IMG/VR virus record: IMGVR_UViG_3300042350_004528 | Coordinates: 186,001-250,000 of that record | Reading direction: 5' to 3' (one strand) | Length of the DNA stretch: 64,000 nt | Shown: piece by piece, positions 3,133-59,570 of the stretch | How the letters are laid out: each line of letters begins with the position of its first letter | How positions within the stretch are numbered: position 1 is the stretch's first letter | Made by a program: the position numbers and the translations under genes | The notes under the pieces: model-generated | The model's database searches: none | The model's input: the letters and a program-made list of their open reading frames with translations, nothing else | What the model was told of the DNA's origin: nothing

Positions 3133-3510
3133 TTAATCTTTCGTTACTTGCATTGTCTTTTCAAGCAACAATATTCGTGGTACAATGTACTCAACATATT
3201 CGGGTGTAAGTTGTTTGTTGTATATCTCCATAACAAAATCAACCGAAGGTGTTGCACCATAGAATGTTCCCAGCAAAACATTTGTTTCTTTGTGTCTTAT
3301 CTCGGTGTAACTTTCCTTTGTGGTTTTCGCCACTTTAATATCAAAGACACAACAAAATTCGGGGTCGGACTGCAAAGCGTTTAGTTTGGCTATATCCGTT
3401 TCGTTTGTGTAGTGAACCTCCAAAACAAGTTTGGGCTCTTTCGGGTTTGTACTCGCTTTAACTCCAACAAAGGTAGTTAAGCAAATGAGTGTTAAAAGTA
3501 TTTGTTTCAT
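3133..3510 (-). CDS. Secreted hypothetical protein, 125 aa
   Basis: Signal peptide ending VKA; ATG 4 nt after -7 box. Confidence 0.8.
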   Translation of the reverse strand: MKQILLTLICLTTFVGVKASTNPKEPKLVLEVHYTNETDIAKLNALQSDPEFCCVFDIKVAKTTKESYTEIRHKETNVLLGTFYGATPSVDFVMEIYNKQLTPEYVEYIVPRILLLEKTMQVTKD

Positions 3511-3546
3511 ACTACAAATATAAACATTTTATTTTTAATATGCAAA

Positions 3547-3699
3547 TTAAACTCTCCCCTCAATGATTGCCGCGAACCAAAGTGATGCGTAAAGAAACGC
3601 AGACATAAAAATCATAAAGGCGACTGAACCATAAAACTCTTTCGGATCTTCCTTGCGAAAATCATTCAGCGTGATGAACATTTCTTTAATATCTTTCAT
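3547..3699 (-). CDS. Small membrane protein, 50 aa
   Basis: Manual translation MKDIKEMF..YGSVAFMIFMSAFLYASLWFAAIIEGRV; own promoter. Confidence 0.72.
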   Translation of the reverse strand: MKDIKEMFITLNDFRKEDPKEFYGSVAFMIFMSAFLYASLWFAAIIEGRV

Positions 3700-3761
3700 T
3701 GTTTGTTTGTTTTTGTTGATACAAAGATAAGTGAAATAAATTTAACTTGCAAATTTTAATT

Positions 3762-3922
3762 CAAAAAAAGGGGAAATTTCTTTCCCCAATTAAATGCATT
3801 TTGCCTTTTTCTGTTTATTGACGGATTACAAAAGACAAACGTCATCCGTTCTCACCCACCTTATAAATCCTTCCCGTGCACGAAACAAGAAACTGGGGCG
3901 GGATTGTTTCTACTTGTTATTT
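3762..3922 (-). ncRNA. Putative small RNA 3 (~160 nt)
   Basis: Array promoter 3927-3958 and terminator ~3762-3790 bracket a GC-richer segment with no ORF at a normal start position; helices AAUCC/GGAUU and ACGGAU/AUCCGU. Confidence 0.5.
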
Positions 3923-3962
3923 AATACAAAGATAAACGAAATAAATTTAATGTGCAAATTTT

Positions 3963-4160
3963 TTACCAAGTGAAATCATTTTTATTCGCATTCAAAGAAA
4001 GGAATAAAATGAATAGAAACAATAAACCTGTTCCGAAGAAGAATGCAAACTCTTCGTTCTTGATGTAACCCTTTGATTGCAGGGCAAGTCCAACGCTTAC
4101 TCCAATGGTTATCAAACCAAGGATTGAAAGCACGAATGGGATAACTTTAACTTTTTTCAT
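3963..4160 (-). CDS. Two-TM membrane protein, 65 aa
   Basis: Start corrected to MKKVK; two hydrophobic helices. Confidence 0.78.
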   Translation of the reverse strand: MKKVKVIPFVLSILGLITIGVSVGLALQSKGYIKNEEFAFFFGTGLLFLFILFLSLNANKNDFTW

Positions 4161-4200
4161 ATTTTTTTGTTTTGATAGTTCAAAGATAAACGAAATAAAT

Positions 4201-4344
4201 TTAACTTGCAAACTTTTGTTTAAGTTTTTTTCGGTTATATGTTTTACCCGAAGGTTTGCTCCTTGTTATCATATTCCTACGAATGATTTGAGCAATGTGT
4301 CTTTCTGACAAACCTTGTTTCCAATCTTGTGTTTCGTTTTTCAT
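4201..4344 (-). CDS. Small basic protein, 47 aa
   Basis: Manual translation MKNETQDW..KLKQKFAS; stop lies inside the next promoter. Confidence 0.68.
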   Translation of the reverse strand: MKNETQDWKQGLSERHIAQIIRRNMITRSKPSGKTYNRKKLKQKFAS

Positions 4345-4382
4345 AACACAAAGATAAATGAAATAAATTTAATGTGCAAATT

Positions 4383-4724
4383 TTATTCTGCAAAATTATC
4401 TTTACCACATTCAGGACAAACTTTTTCCTCATACAAAGTATGGTCTTGTGGATTATGTTCGTTGTCAACCATTACCGATTTCAACTCATCCTTACCACCA
4501 ATCCAACCACAATTTTCGCAATAAAGGTCGTATTCAATTTCAATAACCTCATCAAAAATTTCCTTGTATTCAGTAACCAATTCTTTATCGGTGAAATTCG
4601 CATACCCTTTCATCCCGTATTCAAATATACTGGCAACATAACTATTGTCACCTCGTTCGTGTTCCGATATGATTGTGTTGATGTCGTTATCTACCAACTT
4701 GTCTATGATTTCCTGTCTTTTCAT
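4383..4724 (-). CDS. Hypothetical protein with C-terminal Zn ribbon, 113 aa
   Basis: CENC..CPEC. Confidence 0.8.
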   Translation of the reverse strand: MKRQEIIDKLVDNDINTIISEHERGDNSYVASIFEYGMKGYANFTDKELVTEYKEIFDEVIEIEYDLYCENCGWIGGKDELKSVMVDNEHNPQDHTLYEEKVCPECGKDNFAE

Positions 4725-4751
4725 AACTTAAAAGTTTTTCTTATATTGTAC

Positions 4752-4802
4752 TCATCGCCAACCTTGTTTAACTATTACGTTCTTTCTACCTTGCTTTCGC
4801 CA
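4752..4802 (-). pseudogene. Start-less remnant of the 3' end of a paralogue of 16275..16508
   Basis: WRKQGRKNVIVKQGWR* versus WIKQGKKNVIIKQGWQ*. Confidence 0.7.
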
Positions 4803-4806
4803 TATT

Positions 4807-4917
4807 TTAGTTATATCGTTGTTTACAAATCACCCAAATGCTATAAAGAATAAGTGGTGAAAAAAGAATTAATTGCCCCAAACAAACCATTCTTTGTCTT
4901 GCTGTTAATCTTTTCAT
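4807..4917 (-). CDS. 36-aa membrane peptide
   Basis: MKRLTARQRMVCLGQLILFSPLILYSIWVICKQRYN; ATG 4 nt after variant -7 box TATCTTTA. Confidence 0.6.
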   Translation of the reverse strand: MKRLTARQRMVCLGQLILFSPLILYSIWVICKQRYN

Positions 4918-4941
4918 AGTTTAAAGATAAGTTAAATAAAT

Positions 4942-5106
4942 TTAACTTGCAAACTTTGTTTCAATTTTTTTATCCCCAACAAAGTTATACCCAGAGTTAA
5001 ACCACCATAGGGCCAAACGGATTGACCAGTAAATGCTTCGTTTTTGTTTCCTTCCATTCAGATAGCATTCCCACGCTTTCCGAATTCTAAACTTGTTTAT
5101 TCGCAT
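4942..5106 (-). CDS. Hypothetical protein, 54 aa
   Basis: Manual translation MRINKF..ETKFAS; overlaps stop of upstream gene. Confidence 0.6.
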   Translation of the reverse strand: MRINKFRIRKAWECYLNGRKQKRSIYWSIRLALWWFNSGYNFVGDKKIETKFAS

Positions 5107-5315
5107 AATTCAACCTCAATGATTTCACAATAGTTTTCCAACTCGTCTAACGGAATTCTACCATAGTTCGTTGATGAATAGTAACCTTGAAACTCGTAAC
5201 GCTTCTTCCATTCAGTTAAGGCGTTCTTTGCTTCCTCAACACTATTGTAAGTGTCGCTGAAATGAATGCTAAACCCATCGGGACTTAACACATCGTATTG
5301 CTTGTTTGATTTCAT
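5097..5315 (-). CDS. Hypothetical protein, 72 aa
   Basis: ORF with array promoter. Confidence 0.82.
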   Translation of the reverse strand: MKSNKQYDVLSPDGFSIHFSDTYNSVEEAKNALTEWKKRYEFQGYYSSTNYGRIPLDELENYCEIIEVELCE

Positions 5316-5418
5316 AGTTCAAAGATAAGTGAAATAAATTTAACTTGCAAATTTTAATACAAAAAAAAGGGGCAGATTTCTCCGCCCACCTTTTTCAAAT
5401 ATGAAAACAAATCAAGTT

Positions 5419-5793
5419 CTATGAAAAGTAAGGTTGTATAACCTCTTTGTCGCTCAAATTAGCTCTCATCTTTGCATACGCTTCCGCTTCTTTATCATCT
5501 TTGTTATAGATGAAATCAACATTGCTTGAAGCGATTGCAAATTGTCCGTTCGCAATACCCCAAAAGTAATAACGAACATTGTCATTCACATCAACTGCAT
5601 TCAATGCCCTCTCGCAAACCTCGTTCAGTTCGGGGAATAACTTAACGCTTCCCGTGATACTTGAAACGATTGCAAGTTTCATACTGCCGTTGGCGAATTC
5701 ATCAGCTACCTTGTTCTCACCAATGTTTCTTAAACCCTCAATAAGGATTTGTTTGTAGCTACCCGAAGGTGCTTTTGGAAATGGATTGTTCAT
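5419..5793 (-). CDS. Hypothetical protein, 124 aa
   Basis: ORF, promoter, terminator. Confidence 0.85.
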   Translation of the reverse strand: MNNPFPKAPSGSYKQILIEGLRNIGENKVADEFANGSMKLAIVSSITGSVKLFPELNEVCERALNAVDVNDNVRYYFWGIANGQFAIASSNVDFIYNKDDKEAEAYAKMRANLSDKEVIQPYFS

Positions 5794-5835
5794 ATCGTTT
5801 TGTTTTTTGATACAGCAAAGATAAGTGTAATAAAT

Positions 5836-6006
5836 TTAACTCGCAAGTATTTTTTTAATTTCTTTTAATCGATCCAAAACTTTATCCATTTCTTTTGAAA
5901 TCTTTGTGTGGGTTCTATGTTTGCTATTAGGTTCCCACAACTCGGACAAAGTTTTATATCGTTCTTTGAGCCGTATCTCCTCAACAATCAATACCGAATG
6001 TTCCAT
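5836..6006 (-). CDS. Hypothetical protein, 56 aa
   Basis: Start corrected to MEHS; ends ILAS inside next promoter. Confidence 0.72.
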   Translation of the reverse strand: MEHSVLIVEEIRLKERYKTLSELWEPNSKHRTHTKISKEMDKVLDRLKEIKKILAS

Positions 6007-6008
6007 TG

Positions 6009-6212
6009 TTAATTCAGTATTGATTGGTAAGGGATTGGAAATTCCAAGAAAGGTGCGGACAACCATTTGTCAATTTTGATTGTCTTGTCGGTAATCTTTT
6101 CCTTTCGGTAAACCTTTACGCAAGTTTCCAAGTTTTCATCAGCGAATATGGTTTCGGTGCTTTCATCATCATTTGTGCGAAATACCTCGTACCAAGTTTT
6201 TGTGTTTTCCAT
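6009..6212 (-). CDS. Hypothetical protein, 67 aa
   Basis: ORF with array promoter. Confidence 0.78.
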   Translation of the reverse strand: MENTKTWYEVFRTNDDESTETIFADENLETCVKVYRKEKITDKTIKIDKWLSAPFLEFPIPYQSILN

Positions 6213-6285
6213 TTTTTCTTTTTCCTAATTTTGTGAGTGCAAAGGTATATATAATAAATTTAACTCACAAGTTTTCAACACATTT

Positions 6286-6606
6286 TTACCAAGTTTTTGG
6301 ATATTTGTCCAATGTTTCTTGCGGATATAAAACTTCGTTTCCGTTGTTCAAAACATCTTCCCACCAACGAATACCAATCTGCAATCGTGGTACTGCGAAC
6401 TTCATAACATCTTCATCGTGGACACGAAAGAACAAATCGTTTCTTCCACCTGTTCCCTCTTCGCCAGGTGTTGGCAAAGTTAAAACTTCTTCGCAATAAA
6501 CTCCGCGAACATTAAACTCTTCTTTGAGCCAATTTTCAAAATCTTTGGCACAACTCTTTCCAACAATTGTTCCGTGCCAAACACATACTTGATTAAAATT
6601 TTCCAT
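6286..6606 (-). CDS. Hypothetical protein, 106 aa
   Basis: Start corrected to MENFN; GGRNDLFF motif. Confidence 0.85.
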   Translation of the reverse strand: MENFNQVCVWHGTIVGKSCAKDFENWLKEEFNVRGVYCEEVLTLPTPGEEGTGGRNDLFFRVHDEDVMKFAVPRLQIGIRWWEDVLNNGNEVLYPQETLDKYPKTW

Positions 6607-6694
6607 TTGTTTTGTTTTTGATATAACAAAAATAAATGAAATAAATTTAATGTGCAAATAAAAAGGGGAATTTCTTCCCCTTTCTTATCCACAA

Positions 6695-7099
6695 TTAGCG
6701 GTCAAAATATGTTTCTTTGATACCTTGTTTCTTTTCCATTGACTGCGACATAAGGTACATTGTTTCCCCCATTGGTTTATCGTGGTGAGAAATAACAACT
6801 TCAATGATACCCTTGTTGTCGGTCGGGTGAAACAACATTGTAAACTCCCCAGTGTTCGGTGCAAGTTTACGGATTAAAGTTTCTGCACTATCCGTTTCAA
6901 ATTCGGTGTACCCTGCAACATTTCTCCAAGTCAAAGAAAGTCCGTAACAAAAGAATTTCTTTGTACGCATTTTCTTCATCATTGTTTTTACTTCGTACAC
7001 AAAATCTTCCCAATAGATTTGTGCTTCCATTTCATCTTCAACTTCGGGCATATCCCAACCCGCTAAAATTCTTTTTGTTTCTTTGATTAAAGTTTCCAT
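6695..7099 (-). CDS. Hypothetical protein, 134 aa
   Basis: Start corrected to METLI; SHHDKPMGE motif. Confidence 0.85.
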   Translation of the reverse strand: METLIKETKRILAGWDMPEVEDEMEAQIYWEDFVYEVKTMMKKMRTKKFFCYGLSLTWRNVAGYTEFETDSAETLIRKLAPNTGEFTMLFHPTDNKGIIEVVISHHDKPMGETMYLMSQSMEKKQGIKETYFDR

Positions 7100-7210
7100 T
7101 TGCTTGTTTGTTTTTGTTGATACAAATATAAATGAAATAAATTTAACTTGCAAATTTTAACACAAAAAAAAAGGGCGGATTTCTCCACCCCTTTTTTCAA
7201 TCGGAAAGAA

Positions 7211-7567
7211 TTAAAGTTTATAGAATGTTATGACACACTTATTTTTTTTGTTGTCAATATCGGGTGCTGAACTATTATATTTACTACCCTTTGGTTGCCA
7301 CCTTTCATAATAATAGTTTATGTAGTTTTTAACCAACTCAATATCACTTTCTGCCAAATGCTTTGTGAATGTAGCAACTAATGTTCCGTTACTTGCGTTC
7401 CTTGAAATTGTCATTTCTTCGGAAATGTTTGTTGGCAAAGTAAGTTTGTTTTGTGCTAACTTTGAGCAAGTTTCAAGGGTGTCAACAACATCAACCTTGT
7501 TGGTTGTTTGTGCTTTTGCGGTTGTTACTCCGAACAACACAACTGCGATAAAGAATACTTTTTTCAT
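7211..7567 (-). CDS. Secreted hypothetical protein, 118 aa
   Basis: Signal peptide ending AKA-Q (Bacteroidota Q rule). Confidence 0.82.
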   Translation of the reverse strand: MKKVFFIAVVLFGVTTAKAQTTNKVDVVDTLETCSKLAQNKLTLPTNISEEMTISRNASNGTLVATFTKHLAESDIELVKNYINYYYERWQPKGSKYNSSAPDIDNKKNKCVITFYKL

Positions 7568-7629
7568 CTTGTTTATTTTTGATTATGATACAAAGATAAA
7601 TGAAATAAATTTAACTTGCAAATTTTACC

Positions 7630-7905
7630 TCAAAAATCTTCGGTTGAAAAATCAATGTTAAGTTCGCTAACCATTTGTATTGTTTCAAACTCCGTTTTAA
7701 GTTCATTAACTTCTTCGTTGATAAGACACATCTCAAAGTCCAGTGCGTGTACTTTCATAAGACAAAGAATAGGGTGTATGTGCCCGTTCTCCAACTTAAA
7801 CATCAATGTTGTTTTCTCACCCAAAATTTCTGTTGCTCGGTCATTAAACTTAACCAACTTACTCTTTAGCTCCATTAAACGAATGTCCGTTTGCTTGATT
7901 GCCAT
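7630..7905 (-). CDS. Hypothetical protein, 91 aa
   Basis: Start corrected to MAIKQ. Confidence 0.8.
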   Translation of the reverse strand: MAIKQTDIRLMELKSKLVKFNDRATEILGEKTTLMFKLENGHIHPILCLMKVHALDFEMCLINEEVNELKTEFETIQMVSELNIDFSTEDF

Positions 7906-8045
7906 TTTGTTTGTTTTTGTTGATACAAAGATAAATGAAATAAATTTAACTTGCAAATTTCAGGGATCTAAGTTATCCACATTGTTATAAACAAAAAAGG
8001 GTGGGGATTTCCCCCACCCAATCATCAAATAAACAAACAAGCAAT

Positions 8046-8285
8046 TTAACAAATCAATGATACTTCCATACTTTGAAGTTTTTTGATAAACTTCTCTTCA
8101 TCGGTATCAACCATAAGTTTAATTGTTGGATTGATACTTTGGGCATAACCCCATTTTTGTTTTACCGCCTCAAAGTAATTTCTTGCGGTTTTCAGTTGCA
8201 AAAAGTTGTTACAACTGCTCAACACTTTGAATGCCCTTTCTCGGTCATCGTGGTAATCTTTTGCGAAGTCGGTTACTTTTAACAT
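8046..8285 (-). CDS. Hypothetical protein, 79 aa
   Basis: Start corrected to MLKV. Confidence 0.8.
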   Translation of the reverse strand: MLKVTDFAKDYHDDRERAFKVLSSCNNFLQLKTARNYFEAVKQKWGYAQSINPTIKLMVDTDEEKFIKKLQSMEVSLIC

Positions 8286-8342
8286 ATTTGTTTGTTTTTG
8301 TTGATACAAAGATATGTGTAATAAATTTAACTCGCAAGTTTT

Positions 8343-8693
8343 TTAGTTAAATTGTGCAGCCCATCGGTCGCAAGTGGCTTTGTCCACCCAAATAACCATT
8401 GCTTCCAATTCTTCTTTTGTTGTGATTGGCTCGGTGCTTTCGCCATCATCATCAGTACCTTGTAAGATAGCGTTTCCTACAATAGGGTATTGCCAGTCCG
8501 CCATCATAAACCCACCATCAAACGGATGATACAACCCCTCATCATCGGTGTAGATTGTGTCGTTGTTCTCGAATGTTACAGGACAAGCGAAGGTTTCGCA
8601 ACCATTACCAATAGCAGGTGCAATGTCTTTCCAATCGTTGATTTCAATTTCTTCGATTTTGCGGTCAGCGGTGTTAATCTTAAATGCTTTCAT
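8343..8693 (-). CDS. DUF3846-like protein
   Basis: DDEGL..PIVGNAIL pattern. Confidence 0.65.
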   Translation of the reverse strand: MKAFKINTADRKIEEIEINDWKDIAPAIGNGCETFACPVTFENNDTIYTDDEGLYHPFDGGFMMADWQYPIVGNAILQGTDDDGESTEPITTKEELEAMVIWVDKATCDRWAAQFN

Positions 8694-8729
8694 ATCGTTT
8701 CGTTTTGTTGATACAAAGATAAATGTAAT

Positions 8730-8960
8730 TTATTTAACCTGCAAATTTTCATTCAATTTATTTGCAAAGTTTTCAGCACTTTGTTTATCGTGAAACCAAT
8801 AGTTAGCCAAGTCCTTACCTCTATAAGGTTTTAAGGTTTTGTGGCTTACCACTTGCCCTCGTTCGTTGGTAACATAATAGTATGTCGCACACATAGGCAT
8901 ACCACTCGGTGTGCTTTTACCCTTACGGGGTATGTATTGATTTGATTGTACTTGAAACAT
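8730..8960 (-). CDS. Hypothetical protein, 76 aa
   Basis: Leaderless-type start. Confidence 0.78.
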   Translation of the reverse strand: MFQVQSNQYIPRKGKSTPSGMPMCATYYYVTNERGQVVSHKTLKPYRGKDLANYWFHDKQSAENFANKLNENLQVK

Positions 8961-8984
8961 AATGCAAATATAAGTATAATAAAT

Positions 8985-9200
8985 TTAACTCGCAAATGGT
9001 TTCCAACTTAATGGTTCATCGGTTGAAAGGTCGCAAGCAATTTCAATGTTGTTTAAGTGTGTCCAACACTCGTCAGCCATTCCCGTTGGTTGCTCAAATT
9101 GTTTTGCCAACCCGTTCTCATAGATAAACTTTCGGATAACATCCAAGTCATCTTTAACCATTGCAAGGCGGTGCTTTAATTGATCGATTTCGTTTTCCAT
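8985..9200 (-). CDS. Hypothetical protein, 71 aa
   Basis: Leaderless-type start; ends PFAS. Confidence 0.78.
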   Translation of the reverse strand: MENEIDQLKHRLAMVKDDLDVIRKFIYENGLAKQFEQPTGMADECWTHLNNIEIACDLSTDEPLSWKPFAS

Positions 9201-9236
9201 ATCACAAAGATAAACGAAATAAATTTAATGTGCAAA

Positions 9237-9536
9237 TTAATCAACAACTCCGTTCCCGTAGTAAAGGTCAAACGATTTCTTTTTATAGTCATCGGACTTT
9301 AACCACGCTTGGTACTTTTGTTCCCACTCGTTGTCTTGAAACTTGTAATAACTCCCGTTGCAATATCTTAAACGATTATTCAGTTTATAGAATTGTTCAA
9401 ACAAACCTATCTCGGTTATGTCCGCAATTTCCTTTGTACTGGTGATAACCGATGTCTTATCAAGGTAACAAAAACCCGTTTCGGTTACAACCGTTTCGTT
9501 TCTTGGGTTCCAATAGTTCAATGTCGCTTTGTGCAT
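9237..9536 (-). CDS. Hypothetical protein, 99 aa
   Basis: ORF with array promoter. Confidence 0.82.
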   Translation of the reverse strand: MHKATLNYWNPRNETVVTETGFCYLDKTSVITSTKEIADITEIGLFEQFYKLNNRLRYCNGSYYKFQDNEWEQKYQAWLKSDDYKKKSFDLYYGNGVVD

Positions 9537-9589
9537 ATCGTTTGATTTCTTGATACAAAGATAAGTGTAGTTTTTTTAACTTGCAAATT

Positions 9590-9907
9590 TTATTTCAAAA
9601 TAATACCATCAACAATCAACACTCGGTCATACTTTAAAATCTTAATATCAGCCAATAGTTTAGTTGTTTTACGAAGATACTCCGCTTCAGTCATATTAGA
9701 ATACTCCAATTCATTTTCAATCTTACTTAACTTATTTTGACTTCTTTCGGCTTTTTTAACCATTTCGTGGTAAAGTTCGGAAAGGGTTTCCTTTGTGTCG
9801 CTTGGACTACCTGCGATAATATCTGTTTGTTGGTGGCGAACGCTTGAATAGTCGGTGTCATAAACTCCAACGCAGGTGTAGTCTGTTTTTAATCCGATTA
9901 ATAACAT
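9590..9907 (-). CDS. Hypothetical protein, 105 aa
   Basis: Start corrected to MLLIG. Confidence 0.8.
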   Translation of the reverse strand: MLLIGLKTDYTCVGVYDTDYSSVRHQQTDIIAGSPSDTKETLSELYHEMVKKAERSQNKLSKIENELEYSNMTEAEYLRKTTKLLADIKILKYDRVLIVDGIILK

Positions 9908-10038
9908 ATTGTTTGTTTGTTTTGTTGATACAAAGATAAACAAAATAAATTTAACTTGCAAACTTTATCACAAAAAAAAGATAAAAAAAACTTACATTAA
10001 AGTTTGCACATTAAAAAAAATACATTTACCTTTGTATT

Positions 10039-10150
10039 GTCCAATTAAGGAAGGGCGGGCACTCAAAAGGTGGCTGGGGTGTTCTAAGGGAACCTGCCCT
10101 TTACTCTCGTATTATGTTAAATAAAAAAAAAGGGGATTGCTCCCCTTTTC
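10039..10150 (+). ncRNA. Putative structured small RNA 2 (three-way junction)
   Basis: The only + array promoter in the - block (TTTG 10003, TACCTTTG 10027-10034); stem AAGGGCGGG(10051-59)/CCUGCCCUU(10093-101); internal GCACUC/GGGUGU and GUUC/GAAC hairpins; ends at bidirectional terminator ~10127-10150. Confidence 0.65.
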
Positions 10151-10168
10151 TTGTTTCGGCTTTCTCGC

Positions 10169-10684
10169 TTACTTGAAAGCGATTACATTCTTGTTGGCTC
10201 TCACTTCCTTAATGCCCTCAATCTTGATTGTGCGGAAGATTACTTCATCTGCAACACCTTGATTTGCGGCACTTGAAACTCGCTTAAAGTTCTTGATGAT
10301 TTCCACTTCTTCTGCGGTGGCTTCTTTGCCATCAACAAAGTATTGCAACACTTCTGCACTTTCAACAATGCCCGACAAATACATTTTGTCTTGTGCTTTC
10401 TTGCTTCTTACGATTGCACCATTCTTGCTATCGTAAACTTTCTCGTGCCAATTACTTTTGGCTTGAAAATCGGCTTCTTTGCCCTCACGAACACGCTGAT
10501 TGTTTACTGCATTTTGGTACACAGCATTAAGCAAAAACTTGTAGTTTACAAGTTTGGTAACATTCGCCTTACGCAAAGGATTACCTGTTTTTACCATGTC
10601 TTGTTCAACATTGGCAATGATTGTTGCGAAGGTGGCACTTCCGCCATCGTTAATCGCATTGAAGATGATTTGTTCTTTGTTCAT
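10169..10684 (-). CDS. Hypothetical protein, 171 aa, paralogue of 1..313
   Basis: Shared INDGGSA, KTGNPLR, TKLVxY, REGKEADFxAKxNW. Confidence 0.88.
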   Translation of the reverse strand: MNKEQIIFNAINDGGSATFATIIANVEQDMVKTGNPLRKANVTKLVNYKFLLNAVYQNAVNNQRVREGKEADFQAKSNWHEKVYDSKNGAIVRSKKAQDKMYLSGIVESAEVLQYFVDGKEATAEEVEIIKNFKRVSSAANQGVADEVIFRTIKIEGIKEVRANKNVIAFK

Positions 10685-10760
10685 ATTGTATCGTTTTTTG
10701 ATGATGCAAATATAAGTGCAATAAATTTAACTTGCAAATTTTACTGCAAAAAAATTAAAA

Positions 10761-11078
10761 TTATTCTTCAAGCAATTCCGTAACCTCAAATTCCTTTTCC
10801 TCAATCATCTTCAACAAACAAATAAGTTGGTCGGTTGAAAGGTCTTGCAAAGAAATGGTGTCCATATCGTGTCCACTATCAATAAACACTCGTTCATCAA
10901 GTGTAACCCCACCAATAACCTCGTTCATTTGGTCATCAATGTAGTTAAAGATAATACCACCATGCAGGTTTATCTCTTGTGCGTTGTTGCATATCATTTC
11001 GGTCTTAATATCCTCAATGATTTCCTTTCGTTGCAATTCAATGCGAAGATTGTGTCGGTATGATTTATCTTTGTTCAT
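10761..11078 (-). CDS. Hypothetical protein, 105 aa
   Basis: ORF between identical promoter copies. Confidence 0.82.
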   Translation of the reverse strand: MNKDKSYRHNLRIELQRKEIIEDIKTEMICNNAQEINLHGGIIFNYIDDQMNEVIGGVTLDERVFIDSGHDMDTISLQDLSTDQLICLLKMIEEKEFEVTELLEE

Positions 11079-11129
11079 AGGTTTGTTTTTGATGATGCAA
11101 ATATAAGTGCAATAAATTTAACTCGCAAG

Positions 11130-11369
11130 TTAAACTTCGATTTCACCACTTTTTATTTTCTCGTCAATCAGTTGTTCATACTCGGTTTGTATTTCCTTTG
11201 AACACTGGCTAACTTGGATCGCGACAAACTCACCATGAGGTAAACCCTCAAGTGCGTCATCAACGCTTCCCGCAAAAAACAATTTGTTATCGGACTTCCA
11301 ACGCAAGGGTTGGTCTGTTCCTCTTTCAAACACCAAATAGGTGTTTTCCTTTTTGTATATGTTGTTCAT
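11130..11369 (-). CDS. Hypothetical protein, 79 aa
   Basis: ORF track. Confidence 0.75.
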   Translation of the reverse strand: MNNIYKKENTYLVFERGTDQPLRWKSDNKLFFAGSVDDALEGLPHGEFVAIQVSQCSKEIQTEYEQLIDEKIKSGEIEV

Positions 11370-11547
11370 ACGCTTGGCGTTCTTCTTTGATTTTTATGAG
11401 AGTATTCAACTTGTTCTTTGCACATTCAATCGCTTCTTTCTTCGCACCCTTGTATTCAATAACCCACATTAAGTTTGCTTCTTCTTGGTGAAAGTTATTT
11501 GAACTCAAATTTCGCAACCAATAGTCATAGTTTGAATACATACTCAT
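11326..11547 (-). CDS. Hypothetical protein, 73 aa
   Basis: ORF track. Confidence 0.7.
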   Translation of the reverse strand: MSMYSNYDYWLRNLSSNNFHQEEANLMWVIEYKGAKKEAIECAKNKLNTLIKIKEERQAYEQHIQKGKHLFGV

Positions 11548-11551
11548 AGCG

Positions 11552-11668
11552 TTATAGTTTAGTTAATATACGAAAGATAAGGGCAATAAAATGTAGTGTT
11601 ATTACCAACACTCCAAATATCACAACAAAGTAATAAAAGTAATCGTGTGCTGTCCTTTTCAATTTCAT
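11552..11668 (-). CDS. 38-aa membrane peptide
   Basis: MKLKRTAHDYFYYFVVIFGVLVITLHFIALIFRILTKL; ATG 4 nt after -7 box. Confidence 0.65.
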   Translation of the reverse strand: MKLKRTAHDYFYYFVVIFGVLVITLHFIALIFRILTKL

Positions 11669-11705
11669 AATACAAAGATAAGTGAATTAAATTTAATGTG
11701 CAAAT

Positions 11706-11954
11706 TTACAAGTGAGTAACATGCCCACAATTTAAGCATTCAATATAAGGTTTTCCACCTTGTGCAACAATAACACTTTCTTTGGGAAACAACCACCATT
11801 CATTCTCGCCACATTGTTCACATTCTGCATTCTCACTCCCCATTCTCTCGGTCATTGTCATTTGTCCCTTTCCTTTCAAATGTGGGTACACCAGGTCAAG
11901 TACATTTCCATTCACTTCTTGAAGGACTGCTTGATAAAATTTCGGTTTGCTCAT
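11706..11954 (-). CDS. Zn-ribbon protein, 82 aa
   Basis: CEQC..CLNC. Confidence 0.8.
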   Translation of the reverse strand: MSKPKFYQAVLQEVNGNVLDLVYPHLKGKGQMTMTERMGSENAECEQCGENEWWLFPKESVIVAQGGKPYIECLNCGHVTHL

Positions 11955-12054
11955 ACTCGTTTTGTTTTTGATAGTTCAAAGATAAGTGAATTAAATTTAA
12001 TATGCAAATAAAAAGGGGACTTTCGCCCCCTTTTTTTACCCACAGTTTTATGGT

Positions 12055-12711
12055 TTAATCATCACTATCACTATACTCGTAAACCTCACAATCAACATAC
12101 AACTTCACATACAACTTGCCCTCTTGTTCAACAACCTCTAAACCATTCTCGCCCTCATCTTCTGCCGTATTGTAGTTTACGCTATCATCAGTAATTTCGC
12201 CCTTGTGTTCGGGTGTCCAATCGTTTGCACAATCTTGGAAACTTTCGTGCAACTGCTCAATCATTTGTTCGTTTTCTTCGGTAAGAATGAAATCCTTTTT
12301 GTAGTCAGTATTCTTTCCGTTCCAATTAGTGTGCGACATACCACCAATGTATTCAGTTAGAAAGTCGGCTTGTTCCTTTGTAACCTCACAAAGTACATTA
12401 CCACTATACCTTTCGCACCACTCCGATTGAGCCGATTTTGAGTAAGTGAAATCATCTTCTTCATCACTCAATTCAATACGGACAATACCACTTTCGCCCA
12501 TATAGTGTCCGTCAGACGCTTCATAAAACTGAACTTGGTTGTAAACCTCATTGTCAAAGTAGTCAGTTAAACCACTTTCATCATTCACAATCTCGCCCTT
12601 TTTATCGTGGAACAAAAGGTTTGTGTCATTCATACTATCGCCACCACAACTGAAATGAAATTCAGCGAAAGCGATTTTTTGGGCTTTCCATTTTTCAATA
12701 ATTTCTTGCAT
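12055..12711 (-). CDS. DUF6878-like acidic protein, 218 aa
   Basis: FSCGGDS motif; adjacent to DUF6915-like gene. Confidence 0.6.
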   Translation of the reverse strand: MQEIIEKWKAQKIAFAEFHFSCGGDSMNDTNLLFHDKKGEIVNDESGLTDYFDNEVYNQVQFYEASDGHYMGESGIVRIELSDEEDDFTYSKSAQSEWCERYSGNVLCEVTKEQADFLTEYIGGMSHTNWNGKNTDYKKDFILTEENEQMIEQLHESFQDCANDWTPEHKGEITDDSVNYNTAEDEGENGLEVVEQEGKLYVKLYVDCEVYEYSDSDD

Positions 12712-12754
12712 ATCGTTTTTGTTTTTGATTGGTACAAAGATAAATGAAATAAAT

Positions 12755-13171: not shown

Positions 13172-13294
13172 ATTGTTTTGTTTTTTGATATTGCAAATGT
13201 AAGTGTAATAAATTTAACTCGCAAATTTTAACACAAAAAAAGGGGGAAATTTCTTTCCACCCTCTTTTCTTTATCAAATAAACAAACAAAATCC

Positions 13295-13564: not shown

Positions 13565-13626
13565 ATCATTTATGTTTTTGATTGGTACAAAGATAAGTAT
13601 AATTTTTTTAATGTGCAAGTATTTTT

Positions 13627-16058: not shown

Positions 16059-16113
16059 ATCTGTTTTGATTTATGAATACAAAGGTAAGTGTAATTTTTT
16101 TAATGTGCAAATT

Positions 16114-16508: not shown

Positions 16509-16509
16509 A

Positions 16510-48286: not shown

Positions 48287-48287
48287 C

Positions 48288-53115: not shown

Positions 53116-53637
53116 TTAAAATTTAATTCTAAGACCCATTTTTTGCATAGCCAATAATGCCTCGGCGTTACCCATAGCATCATCAACGGGATTGTGAGTA
53201 TGTTTTGTTTTTCTATACAAACGTTTCCACTCCTGGTTCTTACTAGCATCCTTAACCAAACCACAATACAAATCACCGATACGTCTGCCAGAAAACCCGA
53301 ATGGGTTTCTACCGCAGTACTTATGCATGTACCAGTTAATCCACTGCCAATCAAAGGCTAAGTTATCGCTGATAAAGGTTGGTTTACCTTCGGAATTTTT
53401 AACTAACCATTTTTCGAACTCGCTCATAACCTCATATGGTTCCCCAAACTGTTCATGCTCAGACCTTGAAAACCCACTGACAGCTAACGCATCTGGTTTG
53501 TATTGATCAGTTAATGGTCTGATCTTACCATAAAACGTTTTTGATGTGTCGGACACTTTAACAACACCGAAACATACAATTGAATGTGTACCAACTAATT
53601 CACCATCAGCCTCAACATCCACTACAAAATAACTCAT
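53116..53637 (-). CDS. DEDDh 3'-5' exonuclease
   Basis: VDVEADG, FD, HNPVDDA. Confidence 0.85.
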   Translation of the reverse strand: MSYFVVDVEADGELVGTHSIVCFGVVKVSDTSKTFYGKIRPLTDQYKPDALAVSGFSRSEHEQFGEPYEVMSEFEKWLVKNSEGKPTFISDNLAFDWQWINWYMHKYCGRNPFGFSGRRIGDLYCGLVKDASKNQEWKRLYRKTKHTHNPVDDAMGNAEALLAMQKMGLRIKF

Positions 53638-54068
53638 ATCTTTACTAATTTTTTAATTTCTCTGTCAATATCGCGCTTTTTAATTGTCTCGCGTTTATCG
53701 TAATTCTTTTTACCCCTAGCAATAGCGATTCTACATTTTATCTTACCAGAACCATTCAAGTAAAACCAAAACGGAACGATTGTTAAACCTTTTGTCAAAC
53801 TGTTCTGAATCTTTCGGATTTCTGTTCTGTGTAAAAGTAATTTTTTATCACGATTCTCATCATGACCAAAAAATTCGCTATTTGTGGTTATTTTAAAATT
53901 TTTGATGAACATTTCGTCATCCTTGATATAGCAAAACGCATCAACTATGCTAATTTTACCATCCTTAATTGCTTTAACTTCAGAGCCAAAAAGAATAATA
54001 CCAGCCTCATACTCTTGAAGGTATTCATAATCAAATTTTGCTTTTCTATTTGTAACTAAAGTTTTCAC
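53634..54068 (-). CDS. smpB: SsrA-binding protein SmpB
   Basis: NRKAKFDY, EAGI.L.GSEVK, KLLLH, ARGKK.YDKRE. Confidence 0.94.
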   Translation of the reverse strand: MKTLVTNRKAKFDYEYLQEYEAGIILFGSEVKAIKDGKISIVDAFCYIKDDEMFIKNFKITTNSEFFGHDENRDKKLLLHRTEIRKIQNSLTKGLTIVPFWFYLNGSGKIKCRIAIARGKKNYDKRETIKKRDIDREIKKLVKI

Positions 54069-54154
54069 AATACAAATATAGTAAATGATTTGAATAAAAA
54101 CAAAAAAACCCCGTAATTTTTTACGGGGTTTAGTTTATTCGATGATACGCTCGA

Positions 54155-56811: not shown

Positions 56812-56819
56812 TTTTATAT

Positions 56820-57428
56820 TTATATTAGATGTTTCAATATTTTTTCTTTAATACCAGATTGTTTTATACCCTCGAAATCTCTAGGCGTCCAGACAAAATT
56901 TTCTAAACCCCAATCGCGATCAAATGGGCCATATGAACTATTCTCAACATGTATACCCATGTGTAAATCATCAACAGCGACCCAATGAGTAACTTCTGGA
57001 TGATCTCTTAACCAACGAAGGATTTCAAAATGTCTTTCTTGCTCCCTATCAGAGGTTCGAGTCCACGGAAAATCGTTATGGTCAGGGACAAACCCTTCCT
57101 CTAACCAATTTGTAAAATGAAACACCTCTGTTCCATCAATTGGTCTTTTAATAATACCTTTAGATTCATAGTAGTCACCTAATTCTTCAATTGTCGCGTG
57201 TAATCGCCAATCGGAACTAACAACAATTTCAGCGCCAGTTTCTTCAAGTATTTCATTGAGCACTTTAACAGCTTTATCGTCAAAATTATCGAACCTATAT
57301 TCAACAGGAATCTCTTTCGAGGTCATGGACAACTTTCTACCACCCCACTTTTCTTGTTTTTTGTATCGACTACCCCAATTGTTTGACAAACAAATGACCC
57401 CGTCATTATCTAAAAATATAACTTTCAT
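56820..57428 (-). CDS. HAD-superfamily phosphatase (HAD_SAK_2-like)
   Basis: FLDNDGV, IVVSSDWR, AVDD. Confidence 0.85.
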   Translation of the reverse strand: MKVIFLDNDGVICLSNNWGSRYKKQEKWGGRKLSMTSKEIPVEYRFDNFDDKAVKVLNEILEETGAEIVVSSDWRLHATIEELGDYYESKGIIKRPIDGTEVFHFTNWLEEGFVPDHNDFPWTRTSDREQERHFEILRWLRDHPEVTHWVAVDDLHMGIHVENSSYGPFDRDWGLENFVWTPRDFEGIKQSGIKEKILKHLI

Positions 57429-57429
57429 C

Positions 57430-58002
57430 TTAATAATTTAAATCAATGATATCTTTTTCCAACATTGCTTTTGCAATTTCATAGTAATGTTGGTTAAACC
57501 CATCTTTATTTCTTGGTGATGGTAATACATGCACAAAATGATTACGTTGCCCGTAAAGCATATCAGAATCATCATCTATGATGATATAGTTTTCAACACC
57601 AGACTTATCCATGTACTCTTGCTGTACAACTTCATCCCAATTAATATGGTGGAATTGTAGATCGTTATTTAGGTAATACTCTATCTCCATTCCTCGCGGA
57701 ATTGAATAACCTTTGGCTCTCATACTAGGCGTGATGCCAATGATTTTACCTGCCATCTCTTCCATCTCCCAAACCTTTCTCATAAAGTCTATACCACCGT
57801 GTCTCCAGGTTGAACTAACGACAATTTCGGCGCCAGTTTCAAGAATTAATTTGTTCATTAACTCTTTACTCCAAGAGCAAAATGTTTGATAATGATCTTT
57901 GCGGCCATCTTCCCAAACCCATTCTTTGTATTGACACTCACCACTTCGATAAGCATTCTCGCAGTTCAACACACCGTCTATGTCAAGGAATATTACTTTC
58001 AT
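57430..58002 (-). CDS. HAD-superfamily phosphatase (HAD_SAK_2-like)
   Basis: FLDIDGVLN, IVVSSTWR, RGMEI, IIDDDSD. Confidence 0.87.
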   Translation of the reverse strand: MKVIFLDIDGVLNCENAYRSGECQYKEWVWEDGRKDHYQTFCSWSKELMNKLILETGAEIVVSSTWRHGGIDFMRKVWEMEEMAGKIIGITPSMRAKGYSIPRGMEIEYYLNNDLQFHHINWDEVVQQEYMDKSGVENYIIIDDDSDMLYGQRNHFVHVLPSPRNKDGFNQHYYEIAKAMLEKDIIDLNY

Positions 58003-58211
58003 TTTTTATCATTTGATGAGAGTGAAGAATAACCGAGCAAACCAATTAATACTTTGATACCAAGAGCTTGCCAAAACCCAATCTTTACTAAGATAGTGGG
58101 CATAGCTGGAACCAAACAAAAGTTCCATAACCACATTATAGGTAACGCCAAGATAACCGCTAAAAGAAGCAGTAATCCGATCACAATCAAGAACGCTAAT
58201 AATTTTTCCAT
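57999..58211 (-). CDS. Small membrane protein
   Basis: MWLWN..IGFWQALG. Confidence 0.8.
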   Translation of the reverse strand: MEKLLAFLIVIGLLLLLAVILALPIMWLWNFCLVPAMPTILVKIGFWQALGIKVLIGLLGYSSLSSNDKK

Positions 58212-58254
58212 GTTACAAATATAATATTTTTTTATTTAACAACAAAATTTATTT

Positions 58255-58584
58255 TTATTTTATAGTTACTTTTATGCTAACACCAATCGTATCTATTTGA
58301 TAATCCGAATATATCTTGATTGTTTTTTCATTATCTTCGTAGGTACCAGCATCACCATTAAAAAACAAAATAAACTTTTCACCAAAATAAACCTCGTTAG
58401 ATTTATAATTTGTATCTTTATTGATTATCTCGTACTTATATTCTAGTTTGTCTTTTTTATGATGGTTGTATAATAAAAAAGAAAATCCTATCAATATATG
58501 CACTGATAGGAACACACTTAAAATGAGTTTAAAATTTTCTTTGAAAAATTCTAAGATTCGATTAGTTTTCGTCTCCTGGTTCAT
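58255..58584 (-). CDS. Membrane-anchored hypothetical protein
   Basis: One TM. Confidence 0.7.
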   Translation of the reverse strand: MNQETKTNRILEFFKENFKLILSVFLSVHILIGFSFLLYNHHKKDKLEYKYEIINKDTNYKSNEVYFGEKFILFFNGDAGTYEDNEKTIKIYSDYQIDTIGVSIKVTIK

Positions 58585-59107
58585 AATTCAATTGTTTAAG
58601 TATTATATAGTCGTTCGTTTGAATGTATAAGTTGTTTTTACGCATCAGGGTAATAAATGAGTCTAACGGACTTGTTAATGGGAAATATTCGATGACATCG
58701 GATGGTATCCCATAATTTATATAATTAAACCCAGATAATCTGCGATATTTCTTCTCTCTACCCATTTGTTTATAAGGTCGACCAGAATCATCAATAAAAT
58801 TAAACTCTTCCCAGCCATCTGGATCGCGTTTAGGTATATCCCAAGTTTCCTCGTATTTTGGTAACTTTTCAATAACCTCATTCAATAATTCTGGGTTTTC
58901 ACCACATTGTGTGACAGTACCCATTAGTTTGTAATTTTTCGATTCCCCTGGATTAAATTCAAACAAGATGTTACCATCGCTGGTGATTTTGCCCCATGCG
59001 TGATCCATTGTGATGTTTTCTCTAGGTGAATCAATCTCTATCAACAATAATTTGTTCTTTATTGTGTATACTTCAATTGGATTCCATATCGCTTTTAAGT
59101 CTTGCAT
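58562..59107 (-). CDS. Hypothetical protein
   Basis: ORF track. Confidence 0.78.
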   Translation of the reverse strand: MQDLKAIWNPIEVYTIKNKLLLIEIDSPRENITMDHAWGKITSDGNILFEFNPGESKNYKLMGTVTQCGENPELLNEVIEKLPKYEETWDIPKRDPDGWEEFNFIDDSGRPYKQMGREKKYRRLSGFNYINYGIPSDVIEYFPLTSPLDSFITLMRKNNLYIQTNDYIILKQLNYEPGDEN

Positions 59108-59108
59108 A

Positions 59109-59570
59109 TTAACTATTCTTTAATGTACTATCCCAAGCTACATAACAAACTAGATCGTAATTAACTTTACTGGCATCATTGTTCAATATATATGGTTCAC
59201 TTGGTTTAAATTTAACGTATTCGAGTATATCCTCAGCGGGTAATAACTCACTAAGTTGTACTAATTGTTTTAAACTTAATGACTTAAAAACCAATTTACT
59301 CAACATCAAATTCTCTGGATGGAGTCTACTTGAGAAGTGATAAAAGATATTGTCTTTAGTTACTAAGTGTTCGTTTAAACAATAGTCAACCAAATACATG
59401 AACCTCAGATCTTTGAACCATTTCGGTATTGCCTGATCATTCACATCAATACCATGGACAATCTTAAATTGAATCTGGTCAATATAAACACCACGCTCAA
59501 ATTTACCAGCAGTCAAGCCGTTAAATGATGGGTTTTTGGGATTCGTGGTTATGTAATTGTTTAAATCCAT
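59109..59570 (-). CDS. Hypothetical protein
   Basis: Leaderless-type start. Confidence 0.78.
   Translation of the reverse strand: MDLNNYITTNPKNPSFNGLTAGKFERGVYIDQIQFKIVHGIDVNDQAIPKWFKDLRFMYLVDYCLNEHLVTKDNIFYHFSSRLHPENLMLSKLVFKSLSLKQLVQLSELLPAEDILEYVKFKPSEPYILNNDASKVNYDLVCYVAWDSTLKNS

What the first reader, a model, noticed from the sequence alone, without database searches (positions are those of the whole stretch)
3510..59570. Two translation classes: fixed 4-nt gap between -7 box and start codon indicates leaderless mRNAs
Seen: TAnnTTTG-NNNN-ATG with exactly 4 nt at starts 3510, 4344, 5315, 8960, 9200, 11668, 16860, 19606, 27913, 29785, 58211, 59570, and GTG at 54068 (smpB). Variant boxes at 4917 and 18792 keep the same gap. 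Other cassettes have longer A-rich leaders. Inference: +1 is the start codon itself. These mRNAs would escape the anti-leader RNAs, giving a two-tier programme from one promoter type.
Basis: partly seen in the sequence, partly recalled or inferred. Interest (0 to 1): 0.6.

Follow-up and report, generated by a model that had tools for sequence, protein, structure and literature searches.

The report
Leaderless early genes in Bacteroidota phage
In this 299-kb freshwater jumbo phage, about one early gene in five has its start codon exactly where the host-type promoter is expected to start transcription, so these mRNAs probably have no leader; this is a known kind of mRNA, unusually frequent here, and no experiment has yet confirmed it.

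Summary
All 15 listed sites have a -7 box (TAnnTTTG or a one-letter variant), exactly 4 nt, then ATG (GTG for smpB). The window has 14 exact matches where 1.9 are expected. I found one more site, at 36069.

The window lies in a 298,833-bp lake phage. Its early region carries about 62 near-identical Bacteroidota sigma-A promoters (TTTG-N20-TAnnTTTG). The distance from box to first ATG takes only two kinds of value: exactly 4 nt, or 16-29 nt with an A/C-rich, G-poor leader. Almost nothing falls between.

Published Flavobacterium TSS maps place the box at -12 to -5, so a 4-nt gap puts the A of ATG at +1. Leadered cassettes have a pyrimidine then A at that same position. The N-termini look genuine: one has a signal peptide from codon 1, another shows only synonymous changes.

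In relatives of 50-86% protein identity the gap length never changes, although the gap letters do. Orthologues nevertheless switch freely between leaderless and leadered forms.

The leaderless reading is therefore well supported but inferred, because no TSS data were available. I found no support for "anti-leader RNA" escape or a two-tier programme.

The parts
300..30102 (.). Early region. It holds about 62 copies of one long promoter (-33 TTTG, 20-nt A/T-rich spacer, -7 TAnnTTTG). The minus-strand arm runs to about 18500 and the plus-strand arm from about 18550. The units comprise 46 leadered genes, 12 with ATG at gap 4, one with a 5-nt leader (ATG at 19956) and 3 without an ORF.
   Evidence: PWM hits above 12 bits: 78 in the genome, 0 in a shuffled genome.
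3133..3546 (-). Leaderless unit: promoter, gap tagt, ATG at 3510, 125-aa ORF with an N-terminal signal peptide starting at codon 1.
   Evidence: The orthologue in L044 (64% aa identity) keeps gap 4 with different letters (tggt).
4201..4380 (-). Leaderless unit: ATG at 4344, 47-aa ORF.
   Evidence: The orthologue in L020/L019 (74-80% aa identity) keeps gap 4 (tgtt becomes aact).
4807..4953 (-). Leaderless unit with variant box TATCTTTA: ATG at 4917, 36-aa hydrophobic ORF. The 113-aa ORF 4383-4724 follows without a promoter of its own.
5097..5351 (-). Leaderless unit: ATG at 5315, 72-aa ORF. An intrinsic terminator lies just upstream.
   Evidence: The orthologues in L019, L020 and L041 are leadered, so the class has switched.
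5370..5387 (-). Terminator hairpin that insulates the 5315 promoter from upstream transcription.
8730..8996 (-). Leaderless unit: ATG at 8960, 76-aa ORF.
   Evidence: The orthologues in L044 and L020 (50% aa identity) are leadered.
8985..9236 (-). Leaderless unit: ATG at 9200, 71-aa ORF.
   Evidence: The orthologues are either leadered (L044, L020) or lack a promoter (L040, L041).
11552..11704 (-). Leaderless unit: ATG at 11668, 38-aa hydrophobic ORF. The 73-aa ORF 11326-11547 follows directly.
16510..16896 (-). Leaderless unit: ATG at 16860, 116-aa ORF. A terminator at 16910-16935 lies just upstream.
   Evidence: The orthologues in L039-L041 keep the gap-4 ATG, while the second in-frame ATG (codon 5) is ATA in them.
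18756..19091 (+). Leaderless unit with variant box TACATTCG: ATG at 18792, 99-aa ORF.
   Evidence: The orthologue in L019 (78% aa identity) has a 7-13-nt leader.
19570..19926 (+). Leaderless unit: ATG at 19606, 106-aa ORF. A second in-frame ATG at codon 5 leaves the start ambiguous.
27680..27949 (-). Leaderless unit: ATG at 27913, 77-aa ORF.
   Evidence: The orthologue in L013 (80% aa identity) keeps gap 4 (tcat becomes tgct). The first 20 codons show 6 synonymous and 0 non-synonymous changes.
29707..30102 (+). Terminator (about 29707-29739), then a leaderless unit: ATG at 29785, 105-aa ORF.
   Evidence: The orthologue in L013 (70% aa identity) keeps gap 4 (tcat becomes cgtt).
35896..36105 (-). 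The promoter match is weaker.
53634..54130 (-). smpB unit. A terminator hairpin (about 54102-54130) has a T-run that ends in the -33 TTTG (54101-54104). A 20-nt spacer follows, then the box at 54073-54080, the gap tatt, and GTG at 54068. No other canonical in-frame start exists.
57999..58246 (-). Leaderless unit outside the early region: TTTG-N19-TATATTTG-taac-ATG at 58211. The 70-aa membrane protein has a hydrophobic segment from the start.
59109..59604 (-). Leaderless unit outside the early region: TTTG-N18-TATATTTG-tggt-ATG at 59570, 153-aa ORF.

Best explanation
The window is part of a 299-kb freshwater jumbo phage. Its early genes are transcribed by the RNA polymerase of a Bacteroidota host carrying the housekeeping sigma factor, from about 60 near-identical promoters (-33 TTTG, 20-nt spacer, -7 TAnnTTTG). 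That polymerase starts 5 nt after the G of the -7 box.

In 12 of 59 protein-coding early cassettes, the base at that position is the A of the start codon. The same holds for four separate promoters further on, including the one for a phage smpB that starts with GTG. These transcripts would therefore begin with AUG (or GUG) and have no 5' UTR. They would have to be translated by the leaderless route, in which a ribosome with initiator tRNA binds the 5'-terminal start codon.

The other cassettes carry an A/C-rich, G-poor leader, mostly 14-25 nt and without a Shine-Dalgarno sequence, of the usual Bacteroidota type.

Shown here:
- the motif
- its discrete spacing
- its conservation in relatives
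- that these ATGs are the genuine N-termini
- upstream terminators for at least four units

Inferred, not shown: the exact TSS and the mode of translation.

The two states interconvert easily in evolution. A leader can be lost, or it can be captured as coding sequence when the +1 ATC/AAC triplet becomes ATG. I therefore read the leaderless state as a workable alternative way of expressing these genes, not as a demonstrated regulatory tier.
For: 1. Enrichment and discrete spacing. The window has 14 matches against 1.9 expected. Genome-wide, 17 of 17 gap-4 ATGs open ORFs of at least 38 aa, against one ORF-opening ATG at gaps 0-3 and 5-8 together. Across 58 own plus 111 non-identical relative promoters, the first ATG lies at gap 4 in 22, at gaps 0-3 and 5-7 in none, and otherwise at gap 8-30 (nearly all at 16-30).

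2. Promoter geometry. In Flavobacterium the box lies at -12 to -5, with 4-5 nt to the TSS. The leadered cassettes here show a pyrimidine at -1 and A at +1 at exactly that position.

3. Comparative evidence. Five orthologue pairs at 64-80% aa identity keep a gap of exactly 4 while the four letters change. In the orthologues of the 16860 gene, the downstream in-frame ATG is lost while the +1 ATG is kept.

4. Genuine N-termini. The 3510 protein has a signal peptide from codon 1. The 27913 gene shows 6 synonymous and 0 non-synonymous changes in its first 20 codons. SmpB aligns to its profile from residue 5, with no other in-frame start.

5. Insulation. Terminators lie directly upstream of the promoters of 5315, 16860, 29785 and 54068.

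6. Leaderless mRNAs are known in the host phylum: 5.5% of F. psychrophilum mRNAs, and 3.7% of B. thetaiotaomicron 5' UTRs are shorter than 10 nt.

7. The 5' coding ends are A-rich. The second codon is AAA in 8 of 12 leaderless genes against 11 of 52 leadered genes (p = 0.004).
Against: - No TSS was measured. The one metatranscriptome that holds this phage is stored as contigs, which lie inside three leadered genes and one ORF-less unit. It says nothing about 5' ends and does not cover any leaderless gene.
- The host is not identified. The SmpB relatives are a mix of Bacilli and Bacteroidota at 41-51% identity, so the host phylum rests on the promoter type and the leaders without a Shine-Dalgarno sequence.
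- Ten of the 16 units have no terminator upstream. They may also be translated from read-through transcripts in which the ATG is internal.
- For 16860 and 19606, a second in-frame ATG 12 nt downstream could serve as a leadered start in this genome. For 5315, an in-frame GTG at codon 9 is possible.
- GUG is a poor leaderless start in E. coli (from my own knowledge), so the smpB case is less certain.
- Flavobacterium and Niastella genomes show no gap-4-specific excess in a crude whole-genome count. The distant 642-kb relative LR756502.1 lacks the discrete gap-4 class.
Confidence: 0.7

Rival explanations
1. The ATGs are the true starts, but most protein is made from read-through, polycistronic transcripts that begin at upstream cassettes. 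The promoter sequence itself then serves as an A/T-rich 5' region without a Shine-Dalgarno sequence, and the +1 transcript is a minor species.
For: Ten of 16 units have no recognisable terminator upstream. Some promoters overlap the end of the preceding ORF, for example 8960 after 9200. Bacteroidota initiation needs no Shine-Dalgarno sequence.
Against: If translation relied on read-through RNA, any promoter-to-ATG distance would do. Yet the gap is exactly 4 in 22 of 22 short-gap cases across this genome and its relatives. At least four units sit directly behind strong terminators.
Confidence: 0.15
2. Transcription starts one to a few bases away from the A, either because of a different start-site choice or because a phage factor alters the geometry. 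The mRNAs would then carry a 1-4-nt leader or lack an intact AUG, and translation would use another codon.
For: F. johnsoniae promoters show 4 or 5 nt between the box and the TSS. The phage encodes at least one sigma-70-family protein.
Against: A start at the 6th base would destroy the AUG of genes whose N-termini are under selection from codon 1-2, shown by the signal peptide and the synonymous-only changes. The leadered cassettes show a pyrimidine-then-A start-site signature at the 5th base. T never occupies that position.
Confidence: 0.1
3. One reading: leaderless and leadered mRNAs form two regulated translation tiers, with leaderless mRNAs escaping repression by phage 'anti-leader' RNAs.
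For: The two classes are sharply separated. Three ORF-less units are driven by the same promoter, and one of them is covered by a metatranscriptome contig. The phage carries translation-related genes: smpB and 27 tRNAs.
Against: No RNA with extended complementarity to the leader was found. Predicted duplexes of the three RNAs with leaders are only about 2 SD better than shuffled controls for two of them and no better for the third. They are not weaker with the leaderless 5' ends. Class membership switches between orthologues in 5 of 10 comparable own genes, and in two further families in the opposite direction.
Confidence: 0.07
4. Chance, or a by-product of repeat structure with no bearing on expression.
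For: The +1 triplet of the leadered cassettes is often ATC or AAC, one mutation away from ATG.
Against: 14 matches against 1.9 expected. All 17 gap-4 ATGs open ORFs, whereas only 27% of all ATGs open 36 or more codons. G at the third position is otherwise almost absent (1 of 46 own, 0 of 96 relatives).
Confidence: 0.01

Closest known systems
Leaderless mRNAs of Bacteroidota (F. psychrophilum, F. johnsoniae, B. thetaiotaomicron TSS maps)
   Same: Same promoter type, with the -7 box at -12 to -5. A start codon 5 nt after the box therefore equals +1. No Shine-Dalgarno sequence is involved.
   Different: In those bacteria only 3.7-5.5% of mRNAs are leaderless (13% of F. johnsoniae leaders are 10 nt or shorter). 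Here about 20% of early cassettes are (12 of 59). These are phage genes under one repeated promoter. No TSS data exist for this phage.
Phage lambda cI mRNA from PRM, the classic phage leaderless mRNA
   Same: A phage gene whose AUG is the first base transcribed from a host-sigma promoter (from my own knowledge).
   Different: Lambda has a single regulatory gene in a proteobacterial host. Here there are 16 units in one 64-kb window, 20 in the genome, mostly small early ORFs of unknown function.
In-silico leaderless-gene signature in Actinobacteria and Deinococcus-Thermus (promoter box at a fixed distance from the start codon; Zheng et al. 2011, PMC3160421)
   Same: The same logic applies: a -10-like box at a fixed short distance upstream of start codons marks leaderless genes. 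GUG starts are known in mycobacteria (from my own knowledge).
   Different: That study could not see Bacteroidetes leaderless genes because it modelled only Pribnow-like boxes. Here the box is TAnnTTTG.
T4-type early regions and jumbo-phage early promoters (AR9, phiKZ)
   Same: Dozens of near-identical strong early promoters, each driving small ORFs of unknown function.
   Different: AR9 5' UTRs are 26-491 nt, and no leaderless transcript was detected in phiKZ. Those phages use their own RNA polymerases. I detected no RNAP beta homologue in this genome.

Membership tests
Leaderless mRNA | The transcription start coincides with the first base of the start codon (5' UTR of 0 to a few nt) | not testable with these tools
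   Only assembled metatranscriptome contigs were available. The TSS is inferred from published box-to-TSS geometry and from the pyrimidine/A signature at the same position in leadered cassettes.
Leaderless mRNA | A promoter element at a fixed short distance upstream of the start codon, beyond chance | tested here: met
   14 matches against 1.9 expected. 17 of 17 open ORFs. 22 promoters at gap 4 and none at gaps 0-3 or 5-7 across this genome and its relatives.
Leaderless mRNA | The codon at +1 is the genuine translation start (AUG, rarely GUG), with no alternative upstream | tested here: met
   It is the first in-frame start after a stop in every case. Further support comes from the signal peptide from codon 1, the synonymous-only changes in the first 20 codons of the 27913 gene, and the fit of SmpB to its profile. 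The start is ambiguous for 16860 and 19606 in this genome, where a second ATG sits at codon 5.
Leaderless mRNA | Translation initiates on the 5'-terminal start codon | not testable with these tools
   This needs ribosome profiling, toeprinting or reporter assays.
Bacteroidota sigma-A (sigma-ABfr) promoter | -7 element TAnnTTTG, with no G at the two n positions | tested here: met
   The boxes are TATCTTTG, TATATTTG, TACCTTTG or TACATTTG.
Bacteroidota sigma-A (sigma-ABfr) promoter | -33 element TTTG/TTG about 19-21 bp upstream of the -7 box | tested here: met
   TTTG-N20 in the early promoters and in smpB, N19 at 58211 and N18 at 59570.
Bacteroidota sigma-A (sigma-ABfr) promoter | Recognised by host RNAP holoenzyme, and the host is a member of Bacteroidota | tested here: inconclusive
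   No host could be identified. SmpB relatives are mixed. No phage RNAP beta was found, but one or two sigma-like ORFs were. The leaders are G-poor and lack a Shine-Dalgarno sequence, as in Bacteroidota.
SmpB (tmRNA-binding protein) | A full-length match to the SmpB family profile | tested here: met
   PF01668, E = 6.3e-48, residues 5-143 on profile positions 2-142 of 143.

The most novel reading that the evidence does not exclude
The phage deliberately splits its early genes into leaderless and leadered mRNAs and then shifts the host's initiation machinery during infection. It could do this with its own tRNAs, SmpB or small RNAs made from the same promoter. The two classes would then be translated at different times or rates, giving a translational temporal programme layered on a single promoter type.
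Probability: 0.1. Interest if true: 0.75.

Novelty: new member of a known kind. Interest (0 to 1): 0.45.

Why it matters
Bacteroidota initiate translation without Shine-Dalgarno pairing, and what their ribosomes need from an mRNA's 5' end is still an open question. This phage lineage offers a natural experiment. Dozens of cassettes share one promoter, and orthologous genes carry either no leader or a short A/C-rich one, mostly 14-25 nt. The only short distance tolerated between promoter and start codon is the one that puts AUG at +1.

If TSS mapping confirms the inference, these would be, as far as my searches of the held papers show, the first leaderless early genes described in a phage of this phylum. 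The result would also show how easily the two initiation modes interconvert, and the promoter and start-codon fusions could be used directly in Flavobacterium expression tools. It also improves annotation: start codons of small early ORFs can be fixed from the promoter.

Tried and rejected
- A self-trained Markov gene caller missed most small early genes, so I replaced it with ORF-plus-promoter logic.
- A megablast of the window against cultured phages found nothing.
- Reads: the only RNA holder is kept as contigs. Four pieces fall in three leadered genes and one ORF-less unit, with no 5'-end information and no coverage of leaderless genes.
- Pfam and PHROGs give no family for the leaderless early proteins, apart from SmpB and one membrane protein.
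- Host assignment through SmpB relatives was inconclusive: a mix of Bacilli, Flavobacterium and Chitinophagaceae at 41-51% identity. Viral SmpB relatives are too distant to compare promoters.
- Whole-genome counts of box-N3/N4/N5-ATG in two Flavobacterium genomes, one Niastella genome and two Firmicutes genomes show no gap-4-specific excess. Chance matches inside coding sequence swamp the test, so it says little.
- The nearest public phage, LR756502.1, is a 642-kb lake megaphage with 64% identity on one protein. It has few canonical promoters and no discrete gap-4 class.
- Search for anti-leader RNAs: no dedicated locus was found, and duplex energies do not discriminate between the classes.
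- Rfam: only one tRNA at gathering scores, and nothing for the ORF-less units at E up to 1.
- No relatives of the 59570 protein exist in viral contigs.
- The supplements of the F. psychrophilum paper had no searchable table of leaderless genes.

Full report
**What the window is.** The 64-kb window is bases 186001-250000 of a single 298,833-bp viral record that CheckV estimates to be complete. Many lake-water metagenomes hold it almost identically. Its G+C content is 36.6%. The nearest public phage is LR756502.1, a 642-kb uncultured megaphage from a French lake, with 64% identity on one 620-aa protein. I detected no RNAP beta homologue, found one clear and one weak sigma-70 region-2 ORF, and counted 27 tRNA genes.

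**The observation.** Most listed starts are on the minus strand. Read on the gene strand, each one is TAnnTTTG, four bases, then ATG. Site 54068 has GTG, and sites 4917 and 18792 have one-letter box variants. The pattern scan gives 14 matches against 1.9 expected, and no shuffle out of 100 reaches 14. One match (55144-55158, + strand) lies inside a minus-strand gene and is probably chance. One (ATG at 36069) is an extra candidate.

**The context explains the pattern.** Window 300-30100 is an early region made of about 62 mini-cassettes. Each is headed by the same long promoter: TTTG, a 20-nt A/T-rich spacer, then TAnnTTTG. A matrix built from these sites scores 78 hits in the genome and none in a shuffled genome.

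The distance from the box to the first ATG takes only two kinds of value:
- exactly 4 nt in 12 early cassettes
- 16-29 nt in 46 cassettes
- one case at 9 nt
- no ORF at all in three cassettes

Genome-wide, among boxes with a -33 TTG, 17 ATGs lie at gap 4 and all 17 open ORFs of 38-226 aa. Gaps 0-3 and 5-8 together hold one ORF-opening ATG. Only 27% of all ATGs in this genome open 36 or more codons.

**Where transcription should start.** This is the promoter of the Bacteroidota housekeeping sigma factor.
- In F. johnsoniae the invariant bases are T-12, A-11, T-8, T-7, T-6 and G-5, with 4 or 5 nt between the element and the TSS (PMC6847099).
- In F. psychrophilum, dRNA-seq places the box at -12 to -5 (PMC9723704).

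A 4-nt gap therefore puts the A of ATG at +1. The phage supplies an internal control. In the 46 leadered cassettes, the 5th base after the box is A in 36 and never T, and the 4th is C or T in 44. This is the usual pyrimidine(-1)/purine(+1) start-site signature, at the same position. The leaders that follow are mostly 14-25 nt (median 18; two short outliers of 5 and 7 nt), 67% A and 3% G, with no Shine-Dalgarno sequence. That is typical of this phylum.

**Are these ATGs real starts?** Each is the first in-frame start after a stop.
- The 3510 protein begins with a signal peptide from codon 1, and the peptide is kept in a 64%-identical orthologue.
- The 27913 gene shows six synonymous and no non-synonymous changes in its first 20 codons against an 80%-identical orthologue.
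- The GTG at 54068 gives an SmpB that matches its profile from residue 5, and no other canonical in-frame start exists.
- That GTG sits behind a strong terminator whose T-run ends in the -33 TTTG. A 20-nt spacer and the box follow.
- Terminators also lie directly upstream of the promoters of 5315, 16860 and 29785. For these units the +1 transcript should be the only mRNA.
- Ten other units have no upstream terminator and may also be read from longer transcripts.

**Relatives.** An exact-pattern scan of IMG/VR for the promoter returned 36 loci from related phages at 77-100% nucleotide identity. Their 111 promoters that are not identical to this genome's show the same split: 13 at gap 4, none at gaps 0-3 or 5-7, and almost all the rest at 16-30 (single cases at 8, 9 and 11).
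- Five leaderless genes (3510, 4344, 16860, 27913, 29785) have orthologues at 64-80% protein identity. These keep a gap of exactly four while the four letters change.
- In the orthologues of 16860, the second in-frame ATG is ATA while the +1 ATG is kept. This argues that the +1 codon is the one in use.
- Five others (5315, 8960, 9200, 18792, 19606) have leadered or promoter-less orthologues.
- Two families that are leadered or operonic here (ATGs at about 11075 and 5106) are leaderless in relatives.

The 5' coding ends of leaderless genes look like captured leaders. The second codon is AAA in 8 of 12 against 11 of 52 (p = 0.004), and codons 2-6 are 61% A. The 5315 start aligns base for base with the leader of its orthologues.

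**What could not be shown.** Only one RNA library holds the phage, and it is stored as contigs. Three of its pieces are 100% identical to the window and lie inside leadered genes. A fourth lies inside the ORF-less unit at 3927. None shows a 5' end. The host is not identified. Crude counts in Flavobacterium genomes and in the 642-kb relative show no comparable gap-4 class. The dense two-class layout therefore looks specific to this phage lineage.

**The 'anti-leader' idea.** Three promoter copies (box G at 503-, 3927-, 10034+) drive no ORF. Two of these units end in terminators and look like small RNAs of about 110-160 nt.
- For two of them, predicted pairing with leaders is only about 2 SD better than for shuffled versions. 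For the third it is no better.
- Pairing is at least as strong with the 5' ends of the leaderless mRNAs.
- I found no other locus complementary to the leader and no Rfam match.

Together with the frequent class switching, this gives no support for a regulated two-tier programme. It does not exclude one.

**Comparison with what is known.** Leaderless mRNAs are known in Bacteroidota at 3.7-5.5%, in lambda cI (my own knowledge), and widely in Actinobacteria and Deinococcus, where a box at a fixed distance from the start is the accepted in-silico signature. Transcript maps of the jumbo phages AR9 and phiKZ found no leaderless transcripts. My searches of the held papers found no description of leaderless early genes in a Bacteroidota phage.

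**Verdict.** The leaderless interpretation is likely (about 0.7) but untested. The regulatory extension is unsupported. I classify it as a new member of a known kind, of moderate interest.

Noticed in passing
window 3758-3922 (-), 10039-10153 (+), about 413-498 (-): Three copies of the early promoter drive no ORF. The units at 3927 and 10034 end in intrinsic terminators and look like small RNAs of about 160 and 115 nt. The 10034 RNA is 99% conserved in a relative that is about 81% identical overall. A lake metatranscriptome contig covers 3802-3900 at higher depth than three mRNA contigs. The 503 unit has no terminator and may be a long leader or a tandem promoter for the next gene. None matches Rfam.
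   Followed up: partly
window 53634-54068 (-) and 52065-52139 (-): The phage encodes a full-length SmpB next to a tRNA with a CAT anticodon. ARAGORN finds no tmRNA in the whole 299-kb genome, which carries 27 tRNA genes.
   Followed up: partly
genome 279259-279331 and 278499-278576 (outside the window, minus strand): Two further CAT-anticodon tRNAs lie here. One has an unpaired 1:72 position and two G-C pairs at the bottom of the anticodon stem, which are initiator-like features. A phage initiator tRNA would bear on leaderless initiation. I judged this by eye only.
   Followed up: no
window 993-1014, 1241-1262, 2803-2824, 6665-6680, 17539-17560: The same bidirectional terminator hairpin (GGGGAA...TTCCCC core) recurs almost identically between cassettes. 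The cassettes therefore share terminator modules as well as promoter modules.
   Followed up: no
window 19939-19958 (+): One early promoter has its ATG 9 nt after the box, giving a 5-nt leader, with a 100-aa ORF. It is the only intermediate between the two classes in the window.
   Followed up: no
window 5097-5327 (-) compared with L019, L020 and L041: Leader capture. The first six codons of the 5315 gene align base for base with the untranslated leader of its orthologues, and the orthologues' own ATG is missing here. Leader sequence appears to have become coding once the +1 triplet became ATG.
   Followed up: partly
window 44585-45610 (-), 48288-49817 (-), 49837-50808 (-), 62101-63483 (-): PHROG matches to an adenylosuccinate-synthetase-like enzyme (a family annotated with the PurZ-type name, so a possible link to 2-aminoadenine DNA), to nicotinamide phosphoribosyltransferase, to PRPP synthetase and to an RNA ligase.
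   Followed up: no
window 6859-7074, 7378-7542, 8067-8256: Three contigs of a lake metatranscriptome are 100% identical to the interiors of three leadered early genes. The library could still contain DNA, so this only suggests that these genes are expressed in nature.
   Followed up: partly
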